Below, in pieces: positions 11,955 to 23,523 of a stretch of 64,000 nucleotides of DNA. The position numbers were made by a program, and so were the translations under genes. The DNA is taken from NCBI RefSeq assembly GCF_002571385.2, contig NW_019217909.1, positions 68,183 to 132,182 on the forward strand, written 5' to 3'. Every line of letters starts with the position of its first letter. The stretch's first letter is position 1. The notes beneath the pieces were generated by a model. The model made no database searches and was not told the DNA's origin. It worked only from the letters and a program-made list of their open reading frames with translations. This stretch comes from Stylophora pistillata. Its lineage: Eukaryota.

Positions 11955-14619
11955 TAGGAAGGGAATGGTCAATAAAGTATAGAGGGTAATCAGATTTTTA
12001 CATAATTTACTTTGTTAAGCATTCGTCTTTCATGTACTTGAGGAATGAAGAAGCCTCAACTGTGCTATGTTCGGTTGTAAAGCACGCAGGAAGTGGCTGA
12101 AGATTTTGCTTTGTAGAAATTTACCGCGTTTTTTGCACTTTGCGCACTTTCACCTCCCTTCTACAAAGAGCGTAAAGACTNAATTTACCATTTCAACTTT
12201 GTTGATATATTCAAATTATGAGTCAAAACTCTACGTGGAATACACATAACGGCCTTATACCTATTTATCATAAAGTTCGGATATAAAACGCACTGTCACT
12301 GGTTGAAAGGGCGTGCTATATCAGAGTATAGAATATGGAGCTAAACTGAAGTTGTCACGCCATCTGCCAATTTGCACTTTTTATTGCTTTTTTTCGTTTA
12401 TTGATGATGAAATTTGGAAAGATGCTAGACGGCAAGCAGCAAATGAAGAACCAGGTTTGTTAACTTTCCAAGTGCCGTGAGTTGCTTTAAAATAACTTGT
12501 ACACATCCGAAATCCTTAAGGAGAAAACGAAATGGACAGTCCGGGTTTTGAAGGTTTTCACGCTCACTTTGATTGTAAATTTCCGTACCTAACACTCGCA
12601 TGGTATGTATAGCTTCGTGCTTAAAAACGAAACAGGTATGATGAAACTTAGAAATATATCTAAACTGGCATAGCTGTTAAAATTCATACACATCATGACG
12701 ATGTCAGAGGGACTGCGATCATGGTGAGGTTCTTTGCGGCTACCTCGTCATGGCGATTTCCGGTCATCGCAGTGAAGCAAGTTTCAGAAATTATATCGGC
12801 TGCCCCTCTAGTGAACCGAACTAAGCGTTTGTTCTAATATTCCGAGCAATCTCCTTCTCCCTGTGAGTTCGGCTGCCATTCATTCATGAAACAAACGCCT
12901 TAAGCAGTTTGTTTTCTAATTGTCATGTAAAAACTTGCGTGCATTTGTGAGCCCCAATTCCGCCGGATTTAACTGAACATTTCACTTTCAGATTCCGCAT
13001 TAACTGACTAATAGCTTGAGGAAAAAGTGTCAAATTACACTTGCCGAACTATTTCAGTTTGTGAGCTATTGATGGTTGTGAGCTATTTAACTTTGATGGT
13101 TTGACATTTTTCAAAGCTTTATTCTTGTTCAGCCAATCACATTAATTGAACCATTTTGCCGAGTATTCTAATTGGCTTACTGTAGCCTGCTTAATGAGAG
13201 TATAGAGCATGCTGACGACACTGTTGTTCGCTCTGAAAATAAAGTTTGTTTTTTTTTCAAGTAAATCTCGTGTCTTTCCCCACTCTTCTTTCATGCTTTA
13301 ACCGCTTTCTGTGTGCTTTGCTACAGAACAGAGCTATTTGTTAAAGCAATGTTTTCGCGTAATAAAACAAACAATCGCAGCCAACTCAACGAGCTTTCAG
13401 GGAGAGATTATTGCCTTTTACTACACTTCATACAAGTCAATTTTGGTTGTAGCAGATTCAACAAGCGTATATGTTTTTAGAGTCCACTGGCTCTTTGAAA
13501 CAATATCGTCGAATTTTTTGACAGTAAATCGGCCATCTTGCGAAGCCAAAATTTATCCCGACGCACAACTTATCTTGTTTCTATTTAATATACCATAGCG
13601 CTATTACAAGCAAAACTCGACTGTTAACCGTCTCAAGGTTAGGGCCAGGGTTAGGGTTATATGATACAAACGATGCTTGAAAGGAAAGTGTGGTAGGGGG
13701 GTCCAATCTGCGAAGGGGGGTCCATATCTGGATTTGGACCGGGGTCCAATCCACGGGGTCTAAATCCGCTGTGACACCGGGCCGGGTGTTCAGTCTATTT
13801 GAGACCATGCCCAGCGGTCTGCTGAATTACGTTTTTGTAGTTCATAAAGCTCGAAAAACTCGTCCACTAAAAACCAAAATAATTTTAGAATCACTTGGGA
13901 TATCTAAAACAACATCGAATTTTCTCAATAGGTTTATTTGAGGTTTTCTGTTTTGTTTCCTTCCATATTTATGGCGTCACAAGAGTCTCGAAGACAACAT
14001 TTTACGAAACCAACGTGACCTTTCAAGCTTAATGTTTATGTCTTTTAGTATGGTACGCTCAAGCTAGCTTGACCATTGAAAAACCAACGCAAATTCTTTG
14101 ATTCGCTTGGCGTTTCTAAAGAAACATCGAATTTACTGGATAGGTTTGTATGATGTTTTCAGTGACCTTTTGGTTGAAATTTGTTGAAAGCACAAGCTTG
14201 AAGATTATGTCCACTAAAAAGCATTAATTTTTCGAAATCGCTTCGCATTTCGACCCAAACATCTGATACTCCTAAGAAGTACGAAGGAATCTTTCAGCGG
14301 CATTTGAAAATTTCTTTTCAAAACCATGCCCGGAAGTCCGATCAGAAGTGTCGACAAGCGAGTGGTATTATAGAATGTACAAGCTCAAATATTTTTAGAA
14401 TCGCTTGACATTTCTAAAGAAACAGCTGATATTCTTAAGAATTTTGAAGGGACCTTCCGTTGGAGCTTCTGTAAAAATTTCTGACTGCCGGGCATTTAGT
14501 CTATTAGAGACCGTACCAGGCTGCCGGGCATTTAGTCACAGCGTAACTGCAATGTGTTTACAAATTCCTTTAAGCCTCGTTATACACTGTAATATGCATA
14601 AGACCGACTGACTCTTTAA

Positions 14620-18520: not shown

Positions 18521-18854
18521 GATGCAACCTGTTCCTATTTATGCGACAGTATGTCATTCACGAAAGATACTTCATAAATTCAGCCGCTATAATATGGTTG
18601 AACACATTAAGATTAAATGTAACCCCCTAATAGATCTGAGCCTTTATCCAAACCTTCATTAAAACTATTTGATGATTCAGCATTTATTATATTTTAGAAA
18701 ACCGGAAATAATTTCGACTTCGCGGCAATATCTAGACAGTAATCTTTGAAGCGATTGTAAACTTTGCTCGACGTTTTAGTCTCGTTTGCTGATATTCGTA
18801 TGATGACAACGATATCGATTGGAGTGTAAACCTTCTGATCTAAAAGTAGGGGTT

Positions 18855-19209
18855 TATGTGCACAAACATAAGATCTGCTTTCCCTGATGAGGCCAGAAAC
18901 TGGTGGAATTTATGAATGGCGAGCCGAAGGAACATTAGCCCGTCAACCCAATTATATCTTTTATGTTGGAAGCTCGTGGAGGCGTCAACCAGGAGCACTA
19001 AGGCAGAGAATTATCGAATACTGGACGGATGGATAGCATAAAGAAGATCTCTCATGAATGAAGCATTAGGAAATGTTTATGAGTTATGGGTTCGTGTTAA
19101 GACCTCCAATGGATGGGAGAGTGCTGAAGACATGGAGAAACTGTTAGAGGAGTACGACTATGCTTGGAACGTCAGAAACAACGGAGACATCCGACGTATT
19201 CTGCCATGA
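18855..19209 (+). pseudogene. ET-like GIY-YIG nuclease pseudogene
   Basis: GIYEWRA, YVG, ELWVRVKTS and YDYAWNVRNNGDIRRILP* are retained. Frameshifts are present, and the upstream region plus the first ~45 codons are deleted at a GGTTT microhomology (equivalent to ~22291-22770). Confidence 0.9.
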
Positions 19210-20476
19210 ACAAAGAATAGTTTGAGTTAAGCATGATTTATGATGATGATGCCTTTTCTGCTGACCATGATGCGTGATTTTATATGTTAGTGATGGATTG
19301 TTTTCTCTTGACTAAAAAATGTTCACTTTCCGTTAGGCATGGCTCAGGCTGGTTCCACATTAGATAAGTCAGCTTGTATATTTTCCATACTTTACTATAT
19401 TGGCGTGCTCTCTGTATTGGTTCCAAAACGTTGTCACATAATCGTACTATGTAAACGATGCTGTGCTGATAGAGGTTTATGCGGTGCTTTGTATTGCACC
19501 GGACATTTAATAGAAAATTGCAGAGCCTACGAAGGGTGTGTAAACATTGTAAATGTTGCATATAGAAAGCCTTCATAGAAAACTAGATCGCGTGTCAAAT
19601 TCACTGTGTTCTTACCGAGGCTACAACGGCCAGTTCACGAGTTTTATATGAATACCTCTGTTTAAAATATAGGAAATTACTTTTTTCTCAAATTTTTCTC
19701 TCAATCTTGCAAAAAAATTGGTTTGGAAATGAATTTGTGGCCGCAATTGTGACATTACGGCGCGTCGGCTAAAAACAGTTTGTTGATAATATTAATCTTT
19801 CACCAAAAGTAAATCAGAAAGTTAAGTCTTGAGTTATTTATTCACACTTGACTCAGTCGAAGGAACTTTCATTCATTTATTATCTGAATTCTCTCAATTT
19901 GTTTGTTGTAATTTTATAAATCGGCGAGCGAGGTTTTGAGTTCTACTGAGGTCCATTTACATAGTCTCGGGTATAACCGAGACAACCCTTTCCCCAAGAC
20001 AACTTTACGGAGCGTTTGTATGAGATTTGACATCTACTAACCCTCGTTCGGCCAGGCCAGGCTACCTATTCAACAAAGTGGCGGACAACAGGAAAAGAAT
20101 AGGTGTAAAACGCGAGGACTCTGGTTATAGCGGGCGCACTCATTTTCTGTTCGAGACGTCTCTCTCGGGTGAGAAAAAGTTTTCCCATATGCCACGGTTA
20201 CCCTACCTTCCGAGGTGAGACAAGGCGCCTCCCGGTTGTCTCGCCTACCTGAGACGAGTTCACAATCAGTGGAAAAGGTCGGCTTAAGTTTAGGCCCATA
20301 TAATTGGGCCTAAAAATACGCTTTCAGTAAGTCTTCCCCATTCCGTTCAATTTGGACATTTGTACGCTAATTGCTCAACAGAAACCGAAGAAATTCAACG
20401 AGAAAAGGCTGCTCTAAGTCCCATTGGGTCTAGTTAACGTGTTTCATTTGAGTCAAGTACTTTGGTGGAGGAAAGA

Positions 20477-20629: not shown

Positions 20630-21141
20630 TTTACACACGCCATAGCAGTAAACAAACAAGCAAACTATTACCATTTGAAAACATACATTTATATTAGTTT
20701 AAACTACTTTTCGTGCCATTTACTGACTGAGCAGAGGTAAATCTACGTTAATTGATCGTCGATGCAAGTCATTAACACTCTCCGTAAGATCATTGACTTT
20801 TTTTGAAGGAGAAATCGTTGTGAGAATCATTGCACTGTTGTAATAGGTTGAGTAAATTAGCATTAAATGTAACCCCCTAATGAGTCTGAGCCTTTATCCA
20901 AACCTTTATTAAAACTGTTTGATGATCCAGCATTTGTTACATTTGAGTAAAAGCATTCAGACTTCATCTACAAGTTGTATGGCATCTATTTAGTCAACAA
21001 ATGCTGCGGCTTTTTGGTATCATTGTGTTGTTGATTTATGTGTTGTTCCTGCCTCGACTAAGACGATTATACTAGAAAAAGAATATTTCTTAGAAAACCG
21101 GAAGTCATGTCGACTTCGCGGCAATATCTAGCCGGTAAATC

Positions 21142-22176
21142 CACAGGCGGCCCAGGCTCTGTCATAGGCTCTGTCACAGGCTCCTTCACAGTGGATTATT
21201 ATAGAGTTTGTATAGTGGTTTAGTTGGACTTGCTTTTGAGCTCCGTAAATATAAAGTTGTGTGAAATAGTCAAAGATATAAAGTCTTAAGATATAAAGAG
21301 TAGTCTGTGCTGTTCTTGTCACGATTTGAGGCCGTTTTGCTGTGTTTCAGCTCAACGTCACAACGCTACCAAATAAAAGGGAAGGTAGGAAAGCTCTGTC
21401 TCACTCACGCTCGCCAAAATCGCTCGAAAAACACACTTAAATACTTCCCCTTGAATCGAAACTTAGTAGCACGAAAGCCAAATAGGCTCCCTTCAAGTTC
21501 ACCAAAACAAACTGGGTCGTCGAGGAACCAGCCCAGCGAAAATCTCAAATTGACCGCCATTTCAACGCCATTAGAATGCACGTCCGTCAAATCCTGTGCA
21601 GTCAAAAGTTCGTTACGACGCGGTCGGCCTGAACACTAGCAAAATTAGGCCCAACGGGTAGCCCCACGATATAAATGATTAGTCAGTTTTGCCAGTGTCC
21701 AGGCCGACCGCTTCGTAACAAACTTTTGACTGCACAGGATTTGACGGACGCGCATTCTAATGGCGTTGAAACGGCGGTCAATTTGAGATTTTCGCTGGGC
21801 TGGTTGCTCGACAACCCAACTTTTATGGGATTTGTTTTGGTGAACTCGAAGGGAAACTATTTGGCTTTCGTGCTACCAAGCTTCGATTCAAGGGGAATTA
21901 TTTAAGTTTGTTTTTCGAGCGTGTGTGAGACAGAGCTTTCCTACCTTCCCTTTTATTTGGTAGTGCTAAGACTTTAAGCTGAAACACAGCAAAACGGCCT
22001 CAAATCGCGACAAGAATAGCACAGACTGCTCGTTATGAAGGTAAGACTTTATTTCTTTGATTATTTCACACAACTTTATATTTACGGAGCTCAAAAGCAA
22101 GTCCAACTAAACCACTATACAAACTCTACAATAATCTACTATGAAAGAGCCTGTGACAGAGCCTGAGCCGCCTGTG
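21142..22176. mobile_element. 1035-bp foldback non-autonomous element, P-element-like
   Basis: ~500-bp inverted arms CACAGGCGG...CCGCCTGTG around a ~40-bp spacer. Flanked by GTAAATC/GTAAACC (7-bp target duplication, 1 mismatch). Empty site in the paralogue at ~18738. Confidence 0.8.
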
Positions 22177-22420
22177 GTAAACCTTGAAGCGATCATAAAC
22201 TTTGCTCGATGTCTTAGTCTCGTTTGCTGATATTCGTATGATGAAAACGATATCGATTGGGATATAAACGTGATCTTAAAGTAGGGGTTTCTCGCCAGCT
22301 ATTTATGGGAATGCTAAACAAGAGATCGTCTCATATTAATTCCTTTCTTCAGAGATTAAGAGGAAAGCAAACTTTAAGGTAGACTCGATATTTTTCTGGT
22401 TATCTTTTTCCTGTTTCTTA

Positions 22421-22587
22421 GAAAAGCGGAAGTGTTCACGGGACTAATTTCGATTGGCTTGTTTTTATAGCCTCAACACAAATTGATGTCACATGATAGA
22501 AATAATGACTTGTAACTGGGTACCAAGATTATGTGTAACACAAGGTAAAAACCCGGACACAACGGTTGGAAACTTGAAACTGAAATT
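22421..22587 (+). promoter_or_regulatory. IRF/ISRE-like and IRF-Ets-like motifs upstream of the GIY-YIG gene
   Basis: GAAACTTGAAACTGAAATT at 22569-22587 (contains GAAANNGAAA), 50 bp before the ATG, and GAAAAGCGGAAGT at 22421-22433. Confidence 0.45.
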
Positions 22588-22635
22588 CAGAGCGCGCCAC
22601 AAATTGTTCATAATCTTCAAAATCCGTTAAGTTAA

Positions 22636-23142
22636 ATGGCTAAAGTTCGGCGTAAGAGAGAAACGAGCCGTCTTAAGGGATTGGAAGCAAAAGGTTGGAA
22701 ACATTGGGTAAAAGCCATAGTCCCTCGAAAAGCCAGGCGCACTGAACCACGTGGAGACAGCCAAGTTGGTTTTATGTGCACAAACATAAGATCTGCTATT
22801 CCTGCCAGACAATGTGGAATTTATGAGTGGCGAGCTAAAGGAAAGTCAGCCCGTCAACCCAATTATATTGTTTATGTTGGGAGCACATGCCGGGGTAAAC
22901 CAGGAGCACTAAGGCGAAGAATTATAGAATATTGCACGGATGGATCGCATAAAAAAGATCTCATGAATGAAGCTTTACGTAAAGGTTACGAGTTATGGGT
23001 TCGTGTTAAGACATCGCGAGGAACGGATAATGCTCAAGAGTTGGAGAACGAACTGTTAAAGAAGTACGACTACGCCTGGAACGTCAGAAACAACGGAAAA
23101 ATCCGACATATACTGCCATCAGCGAAGAAAAGTTCGAGTTAA
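22636..23142 (+). CDS. Stand-alone GIY-YIG nuclease, similar to the plant EFFECTOR OF TRANSCRIPTION/HRT nuclease domain (168 aa)
   Basis: Intact ATG-to-TAA ORF with GIYEW, YVGS, LRRRI, GSH, ELENELL and YDYAWN.RNNG. Very basic. Confidence 0.85.
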   Translation: MAKVRRKRETSRLKGLEAKGWKHWVKAIVPRKARRTEPRGDSQVGFMCTNIRSAIPARQCGIYEWRAKGKSARQPNYIVYVGSTCRGKPGALRRRIIEYCTDGSHKKDLMNEALRKGYELWVRVKTSRGTDNAQELENELLKKYDYAWNVRNNGKIRHILPSAKKSSS

Positions 23143-23523
23143 GTACAGTTTATGATGACGATACCTTTCTGCTCAGCGTGATGCGTGATGTTATATGTTA
23201 GCGATACATTTCTGTCGGGCAAAGCTCAGGCTGGTTCCACATCAGATAATTCAGCTTGTGTATTGGTATGTGAGTACAACGAGAAAGATGTTTACCATAT
23301 TTCACGATACTTTACTTTATTAGTATGCTCTCTGTATCGATTCCAAAACCATTGTCTCAGAATCGTGAAATGTAAACGATGCTATTTTAATAAAGGTTTA
23401 CGTAGTGCTTTATATTGTACCGGGAATTTAATAGATTATTGCAGAACCTACGATGGCTGTGCAAACATTGTAAAAGTCACATATAGAAAGCCTTCATAGA
23501 AAACTAGATCGCATTTCAAATTC

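What the first reader, a model, noticed from the sequence alone, without database searches (positions are those of the whole stretch)
22636..23142. Stand-alone animal homologue of the supposedly plant-specific EFFECTOR OF TRANSCRIPTION GIY-YIG nuclease
Seen: an intact, intronless, very basic 168-aa ORF with the full GIY-YIG catalytic set (GIY, YVG, Arg in LRRRI, Glu in ELENELL, Asn in YAWN). From recalled family knowledge, the N-terminal RxKRE, GSH and DYAWN.xxNG motifs match plant ET/HRT proteins rather than Penelope, SLX1 or ANKLE1 nucleases. The C-terminal Cys/His ET repeats are absent, and no terminal repeats or RT enclose the gene. Inference: an uncharacterised animal nuclease of patchy or horizontal origin, possibly an antiviral effector.
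Basis: partly seen in the sequence, partly recalled or inferred. Interest (0 to 1): 0.8.

Follow-up and report, generated by a model that had tools for sequence, protein, structure and literature searches.

The report
Expressed stand-alone GIY-YIG nuclease, coral
This is a real, transcribed coral gene for a small, very basic DNA-cutting enzyme from a catalogued but unstudied family that is multiplied in tandem in marine invertebrates and also occurs in algal giant viruses; its proposed kinship with the plant ET regulators could not be tested here.

Summary
The ORF at 22636-23142 (+) is real: 168 aa, pI 10.5, with all GIY-YIG catalytic residues (Y63, Y80, R95, Y99, E137, N149) invariant in 40 relatives. 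The window is Stylophora pistillata. Spliced RNA-derived contigs show the gene is expressed. The coding sequence is one exon, but a 430-nt intron lies in the 5' UTR, and exon 1 sits in an inserted 1-kb palindromic element.

The protein passes Pfam's cut-off for PF19239 only. A confident AlphaFold model finds only GIY-YIG nucleases as its best PDB matches (T4 EndoII, R.Eco29kI, UvrC), though weakly.

It is not a lone oddity. The profile search found 484 representative relatives, mostly about 160-210 aa. Named ones come from Pocillopora, the clam Mercenaria and the brachiopod Lingula. Corals carry tandem arrays with roughly 3.5-4 kb spacing, and this window holds a pseudogene copy and a fragment. 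Relatives also occur in chlorovirus-sized viral contigs and in one bacterial MAG.

No RT, enclosing repeats or ET-type Cys/His repeats are present. No tool returned a plant ET sequence, so ET homology rests on recalled Pfam content. The antiviral role is speculation.

Verdict: new member of a known kind; moderate interest.

The parts
22636..23142 (+). Coding sequence of the 168-aa GIY-YIG protein (stop included)
   Evidence: ORF list and sequence; PF19239 match; identical protein called on RNA-derived contigs in 81 blocks of the collection
22636..22809 (+). N-terminal extension, residues 1-58: RxxRE, the W21/W24 pair, P30 and G45. It is family-specific and modelled as a small beta unit packed on the core
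   Evidence: Invariant columns in A1; pLDDT 89-96 over residues 11-50; also present in viral and bacterial relatives
22810..23097 (+). GIY-YIG catalytic core, residues 59-154. Codons: Y63 22822-22824, Y80 22873-22875, R95 22918-22920, Y99 22930-22932, E137 23044-23046, N149 23080-23082
   Evidence: Residue positions; invariance; secondary structure beta-beta-alpha-alpha-beta-alpha; best fold matches are GIY-YIG enzymes
21701..22040 (+). Exon 1 (5' UTR), minimum extent as seen in the longest contig
   Evidence: L001, L003, L005 and L006 align to 21701/21817-22040 and then jump to exon 2
22041..22470 (+). 5' UTR intron with GT..AG ends
   Evidence: Gap in all contigs that reach exon 1; donor and acceptor read
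22471..23523 (+). Exon 2: rest of the 5' UTR, the CDS, and the 3' UTR up to the point where most transcripts leave the reference
   Evidence: Eight contigs are colinear over 22469-23523 at 99.4-99.8%
21140..22177 (.). Palindromic (foldback, MITE-like) insertion of about 1.04 kb, with TAA on both sides. It contains exon 1 and the splice donor
   Evidence: Self reverse-complement at 85-95%. The older tandem copy joins the two flanks directly at 18742/18739
18850..19212 (+). Decayed tandem paralogue (pseudogene). It lacks residues 1-44 and has frameshifts, a TAG at the Ser104 codon and a 3-nt deletion in the catalytic Glu region
   Evidence: tblastn 45% over residues 45-168; nucleotide alignment and three-frame translation
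18596..19602 (+). Older copy of the tandem unit, including flanks; start-to-start spacing about 3.91 kb to the intact gene
   Evidence: Direct-repeat families D1-D11; blastn 75% for 22768-23523 against 18850-19602
5091..5282 (+). Fragment of a third copy (N-terminal 63 residues only)
   Evidence: tblastn 37%, E=3e-7; ORF list

Best explanation
This is a host gene of the coral Stylophora pistillata for a small, stand-alone, catalytically competent GIY-YIG endonuclease of Pfam family PF19239. Shown: the gene is transcribed and spliced. The coding sequence is under purifying selection. The predicted fold is GIY-YIG with a conserved 58-residue N-terminal add-on. All six catalytic positions are kept. 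The family sits in tandem arrays in corals and has relatives in other marine invertebrates, chloroviruses and one bacterium. Inferred mechanism: the very basic protein enters the nucleus and binds DNA through its basic surface and the Trp-rich N-terminal unit. It then cuts a phosphodiester bond with one metal ion held by E137 (N149 supporting), with Y63/Y80 and R95/Y99 activating the water and stabilising the phosphate, as in UvrC, I-TevI, R.Eco29kI and T4 EndoII. With a single active site it would nick as a monomer and make double-strand cuts only if it oligomerises like EndoII or Eco29kI. Guessed biological role: a DNA-degrading or nicking effector in a fast-turning-over gene family, most plausibly acting on foreign or damaged DNA.
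For: ORF and motifs. PF19239 above cut-off. Invariance of Y63, Y80, R95, Y99, E137 and N149 in 40 relatives. AF2 pLDDT 88. The ranked PDB fold matches are T4 EndoII, R.Eco29kI and UvrC, and T4 EndoII is the best PDB sequence match. Three matches in the viral structure library (BFVD) reach E=5e-7 to 9e-4. Spliced transcripts. Organism and Pocillopora relative. 484 representative relatives, mostly full-length and 160-210 aa. Tandem arrays. dN/dS median 0.45, and 0.29-0.39 for the window gene. The Lingula gene lies between ordinary host genes.
Against: No biochemical data exist for any animal member. Foldseek and PDB sequence E-values are weak (0.05-0.3). Nuclear location, substrate and oligomeric state are inferred only. 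The defence role rests on family dynamics (arrays, pseudogenes, moderately relaxed selection), not on any induction or infection data. PADLOC and PHROGs gave nothing. The long 5' UTR with upstream ATGs could limit translation.
Confidence: 0.6

Rival explanations
1. It is an ET-like nicking factor: the animal counterpart of the nuclease module of plant EFFECTOR OF TRANSCRIPTION proteins, making single-strand nicks linked to DNA repair or to DNA methylation and gene regulation.
For: The only Pfam family above cut-off is PF19239; I recall, but did not verify, that it holds plant ET. The plant domain nicks DNA and affects methylation (PMC6585611). None of the proteins scanned individually against Pfam scores above 62 bits per domain against the 163-position model, so the Pfam seed is probably a third group.
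Against: No plant ET sequence could be obtained, so no alignment was made. The zinc- and DNA-binding ET repeats that target ET proteins are absent. Tandem expansion and pseudogene turnover are unusual for a core regulator.
Confidence: 0.15
2. It is a selfish or transposon-associated nuclease that spreads its own copies, or a recently domesticated one.
For: Multi-copy family. Transposon-rich surroundings: Harbinger-type THAP-DDE genes, a foldback insertion and a BED-like gene. The bacterial relative lies among IS elements. GIY-YIG domains serve Penelope-like elements and homing endonucleases (PMC8557442, PMC1564403).
Against: No TIR, LTR, RT or transposase is enclosed with the ORF. Copies are local tandem duplicates with about 3.5-4 kb spacing rather than dispersed insertions. 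Copies are 45-78% identical, not near-identical. dN/dS is below 1. Lingula has a single copy between host genes. There is no intron or intein context and no NUMOD or Zn-finger module.
Confidence: 0.1
3. It is viral or contaminant DNA, or a very recent transfer from a giant virus, rather than a coral gene.
For: Homologues at 27-31% identity with the same architecture occur in chlorovirus-sized contigs. These viral proteins gave the best structural matches.
Against: The transcript carries a spliceosomal GT..AG intron. The flanks are coral repeats and genes. The nearest named relative is in another pocilloporid coral, at 69% identity. The viral clade is separate with long branches. GC content is the same as the surrounding window.
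Confidence: 0.03

Closest known systems
Pfam PF19239 (GIY_YIG_domain), an uncharacterised GIY-YIG family
   Same: The protein scores 41.6 bits against a cut-off of 21.4. All 119 other listed homologues but one carry the same precomputed assignment, and so do the chlorovirus proteins.
   Different: Only the C-terminal third (residues 102-158) aligns to the Pfam model, so the coral clade is distant from whatever seeded it.
Plant EFFECTOR OF TRANSCRIPTION (ET1, ET2, HRT)
   Same: A GIY-YIG domain with nicking activity in a nuclear protein (PMC6585611).
   Different: There are no ET repeats. The host is an animal. The protein is 168 aa rather than about 480-500 aa (length from memory), and the family is in tandem multi-copy arrays. 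The literature calls ET plant-only.
Bacteriophage T4 endonuclease II (DenA), PDB 2WSH
   Same: It is the best PDB match by both fold and profile sequence (E=0.046). It is a small stand-alone GIY-YIG enzyme with an N-terminal extension and similar VYxGxT...RI..Y...S.K..LI..AL..G spacing.
   Different: The matches are marginal, and there is no evidence of tetramer formation. EndoII is a phage enzyme that attacks host DNA (my knowledge).
Chlorovirus 198-206-aa proteins (contigs of 288,047, 321,240 and 326,592 bp)
   Same: Same full-length architecture, catalytic residues and YNYAWNxRxNG motif. They pass the PF19239 cut-off. Foldseek probability is 1.0.
   Different: Identity is 23-31% (27-31% by tblastn; 23-27% in the A3 alignment). 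They have an extra conserved C-terminal tail and form a separate clade. Their function is also unknown.
Penelope-like element endonuclease, SLX1 and ANKLE1
   Same: GIY-YIG catalytic core.
   Different: No RT or CCHH finger (Penelope-like elements). No RING finger, and the C-terminal Asn is present (SLX1). No ankyrin or LEM domains (ANKLE1). Family features are as given in PMC1564403 and PMC8557442.

Membership tests
GIY-YIG nuclease superfamily | GIY and YIG motifs on a beta hairpin | tested here: met
   G61-I62-Y63 and Y80-V81-G82 lie on strands 60-68 and 77-83. Y63, Y80 and G82 are invariant in A1.
GIY-YIG nuclease superfamily | Central Arg, metal-binding Glu and C-terminal Asn | tested here: met
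   R95, E137 and N149 are invariant in 40 sequences, and so is Y99.
GIY-YIG nuclease superfamily | alpha/beta GIY-YIG fold | tested here: met
   The AF2 model has pLDDT 88. The ranked PDB matches are T4 EndoII, R.Eco29kI, UvrC and Hpy188I, but with E=0.14-0.5. Generic PF01541 scores 18.5 bits, below its 22.6 cut-off.
GIY-YIG nuclease superfamily | Metal-dependent DNA cleavage | not testable with these tools
   This needs a biochemical assay.
Pfam PF19239 | Score above the curated gathering threshold | tested here: met
   41.6 bits against 21.4.
Plant ET proteins | C-terminal Cys/His ET repeats (zinc and DNA binding) | tested here: not met
   The protein ends 19 residues after N149. No Cys-rich region was seen in it or in the 14 relatives read.
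Plant ET proteins | Nuclease domain specifically related to that of ET | not testable with these tools
   No plant ET sequence was returned by any search. The link between PF19239 and ET is from memory only.
Penelope-like elements | Endonuclease fused or adjacent to a PLE reverse transcriptase; CCHH or CxC fingers | tested here: not met
   It is a stand-alone ORF. The nearest RT fragment is at 8654-9055 on the minus strand. There is no Cys/His finger.
SLX1 | C-terminal RING finger and no C-terminal Asn (PMC1564403) | tested here: not met
   There is no RING finger, and N149 is present and invariant.
ANKLE1 / COG3680 (Metazoa) | N-terminal ankyrin repeats and LEM domain | tested here: not met
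   There are no such Pfam hits, and the N-terminus is a 58-residue family-specific unit.
GIY-YIG homing endonucleases (I-TevI type) | C-terminal NUMOD or DNA-binding modules; location in an intron, intein or free-standing in a phage | tested here: not met
   There is no C-terminal module. It is a nuclear gene with its own spliced transcript.
T4 EndoII-like nucleases | Significant sequence or fold similarity to EndoII | tested here: inconclusive
   It is the top match in both searches, but with E=0.046 (sequence profile) and E=0.14 (fold), TM 0.43-0.52.

The most novel reading that the evidence does not exclude
The marine-invertebrate proteins, the chlorovirus proteins, rare bacterial members and the nuclease module of plant ET form one ancient EndoII-like family of stand-alone GIY-YIG nucleases. 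In corals and bivalves the family has been expanded into tandem arrays as an innate-immune effector that cuts foreign (viral or symbiont-derived) DNA. ET would then not be a plant invention.
Probability: 0.15. Interest if true: 0.75.

Novelty: new member of a known kind. Interest (0 to 1): 0.45.

Why it matters
If the family is active, corals, clams and brachiopods carry dozens of copies of a small nuclease nobody has studied. These copies sit in fast-evolving tandem clusters, which is the pattern typical of invertebrate immune genes. Related genes are conserved in chloroviruses. A verified link to plant ET proteins would overturn the published view that the ET nuclease is plant-specific and was recruited directly from bacterial UvrC. 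On a practical level, the public gene models at this locus are wrong: one fuses the nuclease to a transposon-like gene and drops the catalytic Asn, and the other omits the nuclease altogether.

Tried and rejected
- A word search for longer relatives, using the chimeric 569-aa model restricted to residues 1-143, found nothing at E<=0.01.
- A profile word search with a 539-aa first sequence (A2) was swamped by low-complexity words and returned only the query. All three word searches are therefore spent without reaching plant ET.
- The profile search lists only its best 150 of 484 hits, down to E=1e-17, so weaker hits, where plant proteins would fall, were not visible.
- The metagenome scan returned almost only coral-holobiont contigs.
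- Alignment A3 was too diverse for pattern scanning.
- Literature searches found nothing relevant for PF19239, for the gene identifiers or for the family motifs.
- PADLOC and PHROGs gave no significant hit.
- tblastn against phage and plasmid collections gave no match.
- Twenty clusters were looked up for names and only five carried one, so no taxonomic census was possible.
- A 40-sequence tree left the animal part unresolved and joined the long bacterial, TARA and viral branches unreliably. No direction of transfer can be read from it.
- The Penelope, SLX1, ANKLE1 and homing-endonuclease readings were rejected on architecture.
The coding sequence lies in one exon, and the downstream spliced model was used only as the protein id returned by a tool.
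- The N positions in the window were left untouched.

Full report
**1. Observation**

It starts with ATG, has an in-frame TAA immediately upstream, and encodes 168 aa. It has 40 Lys+Arg against 15 Asp+Glu, giving pI 10.5.

The quoted motifs are all present:
- RRKRE at residues 5-9
- GIY at 61-63
- YVG at 80-82
- R95 in LRRRI
- GSH at 103-105
- E137 in ELENELL
- N149 in YDYAWN

It is far beyond a chance ORF:
- Pfam PF19239 (GIY_YIG_domain) scores E=1.4e-10, 41.6 bits against a curated cut-off of 21.4. The generic PF01541 stays below its cut-off. NCBIfam has nothing.
- The word search found 244 homologues, the best non-self hit at E=1e-68.
- In an alignment of 40 of them, Y63, Y80, G82, R95, Y99, E137 and N149 are invariant. 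So are W21, W24, P30 and G45 in the N-terminal part.

**2. Organism and public annotation**

The identical protein clusters with two Stylophora pistillata entries.
- PFX26438.1 (UniProt A0A2B4SCY2, 'GIY-YIG domain-containing protein', 569 aa) joins residues 1-143 of this ORF to the downstream gene. That join drops N149.
- RefSeq XP_022789292.1 (433 aa) is the downstream gene alone.

No public 168-aa model was found. All eight RNA-derived contigs are colinear through the whole ORF, which speaks against the fused model.

**3. Expression and gene structure**

The exact protein is called on short contigs (1.2-1.6 kb) in 81 blocks of run assemblies. Aligned to the window, those that reach upstream match 21701/21817-22040 and then resume at 22469.

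With the 2-nt overlap resolved, this is a canonical GT..AG intron at 22041-22470. These contigs are therefore spliced RNA. The coding sequence is intronless, but the gene is not.

Most contigs leave the reference at 23523/23524 and continue with sequence that resembles only the paralogue's downstream region (19583-19739). One contig (L005) follows the reference. The reference haplotype therefore carries a polymorphic insertion in the 3' UTR. It starts CAGGG and holds the downstream gene, which has a weak, sub-threshold BED-finger match.

**4. Local repeats**

No direct or inverted repeat pair encloses the ORF. What exists is a tandem duplication with about 3.91 kb spacing:
- 18596-19602 matches 20846-23523 in pieces.
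- The coding parts, 22768-23523 and 18850-19602, are 75% identical.

The older copy is a pseudogene:
- it lacks the first 44 codons;
- it has frameshifts;
- it has a TAG at the Ser104 codon;
- it has a 3-nt deletion beside the catalytic Glu.

A third copy survives only as an N-terminal fragment at 5091-5282.

Comparison of the two units shows that 21140-22177 is an insertion in the intact unit. It is a 1.04-kb palindrome whose arms are 85-95% complementary. TAA stands on both sides where the older copy has a single TAA. From my knowledge, a 3-bp TAA duplication is typical of PIF/Harbinger-type elements. Exon 1 and the splice donor lie inside this insertion, so the present transcript start is borrowed from a foldback element.

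**5. Structure**

AlphaFold2 with the 40-sequence alignment gives pLDDT 88 and pTM 0.85. The core runs strand 60-68, strand 77-83, helices 91-102 and 104-115, strand 119-127 and helix 130-143. A confidently modelled small beta unit from residues 25-48 packs on it.

Fold and sequence comparisons:
- Against the PDB, Foldseek ranks T4 EndoII (2WSH), R.Eco29kI (3NIC, 3MX4), UvrC N-terminal domain (1YCZ) and Hpy188I on top. E-values are weak, 0.14-0.5, with probability up to 0.84.
- A profile search of PDB sequences also puts T4 EndoII first, at E=0.046.
- Against predicted viral structures, three proteins match with probability 1.0 and E=5.5e-7 to 9e-4.

**6. The family**

The profile search of 1.84 billion representatives found 484 proteins at E<=1e-3, 226 at E<=1e-10 and 57 at E<=1e-30. 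Most of the 150 listed are 100-230 aa, and the longer of these match over nearly the whole profile.

Named members:
- Pocillopora damicornis RMX53144.1
- Mercenaria mercenaria XP_053393955.1, a 991-aa model holding five or six copies
- Lingula anatina XP_013390606.1

Some proteins carry two domains, the second degenerate. None of the 14 relatives read has Cys/His repeats.

In coral-type contigs the genes stand in arrays with roughly 3.5-4 kb spacing. There are five in 20 kb in L013 and four in L014, and several metagenome loci hold two copies. In Lingula the gene is single, uninterrupted, and lies between Frag1-like and ATG13-like host genes.

Among 60 intact ORFs, pairwise dN/dS has a median of 0.45. 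Pairs with the window gene give 0.29-0.39. This is purifying but fairly relaxed selection, and a few pairs come near 1.

**7. Relatives outside animals**

*Viruses.* IMG/VR holds relatives at 27-31% identity. They have the same layout from the N-terminal RREK through YNYAWNxRxNG, and they pass the PF19239 cut-off. A second scan found them on 12 viral contigs, including contigs of 288,047, 321,240 and 326,592 bp. From memory, the first two sizes are those of chloroviruses ATCV-1 and FR483.

*Bacteria and archaea.* One genome per 185,579 species was scanned, but only for two peptide patterns. A single relative appeared, in a Methylococcales MAG. It sits next to HicA/HicB-like genes and IS91/IS21 transposases, and it has Gln where the catalytic Glu stands.

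*Phages and plasmids.* The phage and plasmid collections gave no tblastn match, and PADLOC and PHROGs gave no significant hit.

*Tree.* The viral clade is well supported (99/97) and separate. The window protein pairs with Pocillopora. The rest is unresolved, and the long-branch joins are unreliable. No donor or direction can be inferred.

**8. The plant ET question**

The literature states that ET genes are found exclusively in plants. It also states that their GIY-YIG domain nicks DNA and was recruited from a bacterial UvrC-like domain (PMC6585611). The 2006 classification of the superfamily has neither ET nor this family (PMC1564403).

Both are leads, not tests.

There is one indirect hint. 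None of the animal or viral proteins scanned individually against Pfam scores above 62 bits per domain against the 163-position Pfam model. Its seed is therefore probably a third, distant group.

The defining ET repeats are absent, so this is not an ET protein. Whether it shares the ET nuclease module remains open.

**9. Mechanism and role**

*Shown:*
- an expressed, constrained gene with a complete GIY-YIG catalytic set;
- a conserved extra N-terminal unit;
- tandem family dynamics.

*Inferred:*
- one-metal phosphodiester cleavage of DNA, as in UvrC, I-TevI, Eco29kI and EndoII;
- nuclear location, from the basic composition;
- nicking unless the protein oligomerises.

*Guessed:*
- a role against foreign or damaged DNA. 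This is suggested by the arrays, the pseudogene turnover, the relaxed selection and the viral relatives.
- One preprint lists an unspecified 'GIY-YIG domain-containing protein' among transcripts raised in previously bleached Montipora. Its family was not checked.

*Rivals:*
- an ET-like nicking regulator;
- a selfish or transposon-linked nuclease, which lacks supporting termini, RT or dispersed copies;
- viral contamination, which the spliced transcript contradicts.

**10. Verdict**

The ET kinship is untested, and the antiviral role is speculative.

Novelty: new member of a known kind. Interest: 0.45.

Noticed in passing
window 21140-22177: A 1.04-kb palindromic (foldback or MITE-like) element with TAA on both sides is inserted upstream of the gene and is absent from the older tandem copy. 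It supplies exon 1 and the splice donor of the nuclease transcript.
   Followed up: yes
window 23523/23524 and 23966-25941: Most RNA contigs diverge from the reference at 23523 and one follows it, so there is a polymorphic insertion starting CAGGG. It carries a two-exon gene (XP_022789292.1) with only a weak, sub-threshold BED-finger match. PFX26438.1 fuses this gene to the nuclease ORF and loses N149.
   Followed up: partly
window 26412-27950 and 39516-41054 (both -): Two identical 512-aa ORFs with THAP + HTH_Tnp_4 + DDE_Tnp_4 domains (Harbinger-type transposase). Each lies next to a TPR-rich gene, so this is a segmental duplication of about 5 kb or more. A 136-nt repeat at 20701-20836 recurs at 28146-28285 and 41250-41389.
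   Followed up: partly
window 28949-31828 (-) and 42053-43519 (-): A 959-aa protein with strong TPR_12/TPR_10 repeats has weak, sub-threshold N-terminal matches to DZIP3-like HEPN and NPHP3_N. This is an NLR-like architecture 6 kb from the nuclease gene. A truncated duplicate lies at 42-43.5 kb.
   Followed up: no
window 8654-9055 and 9137-9568 (-): A reverse-transcriptase fragment (RVT_1) and a THAP-domain ORF. They are unrelated to the nuclease gene and 13 kb away.
   Followed up: no
L015 2797-3219 (Methylococcales MAG CAXXSE010000006.1): The only bacterial relative found is 140 aa, with the W..W unit, GSH and YDYAWN but Gln at the catalytic Glu column. It is flanked by HicA/HicB-like genes and IS21/IS91 transposases.
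   Followed up: partly
P0179, P0188, P0219, P0220, P0254, P0297; P0159 (Mercenaria): Some members have two nuclease domains in one protein, with the second lacking parts of the catalytic set. The clam model strings five or six copies together, which probably reflects a tandem array merged by the annotator.
   Followed up: partly
L085 (GOS AACY020177010.1) and L083 (TARA scaffold): These are marine plankton contigs with distant relatives. L085 groups with the chlorovirus proteins (99/97), which suggests marine algal viruses or algae also carry the gene.
   Followed up: partly
window 54120-54367 and single N at 12181, 25926, 35404, 38396, 49951: Assembly gaps or masked bases. They were left as they are and not filled.
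   Followed up: no
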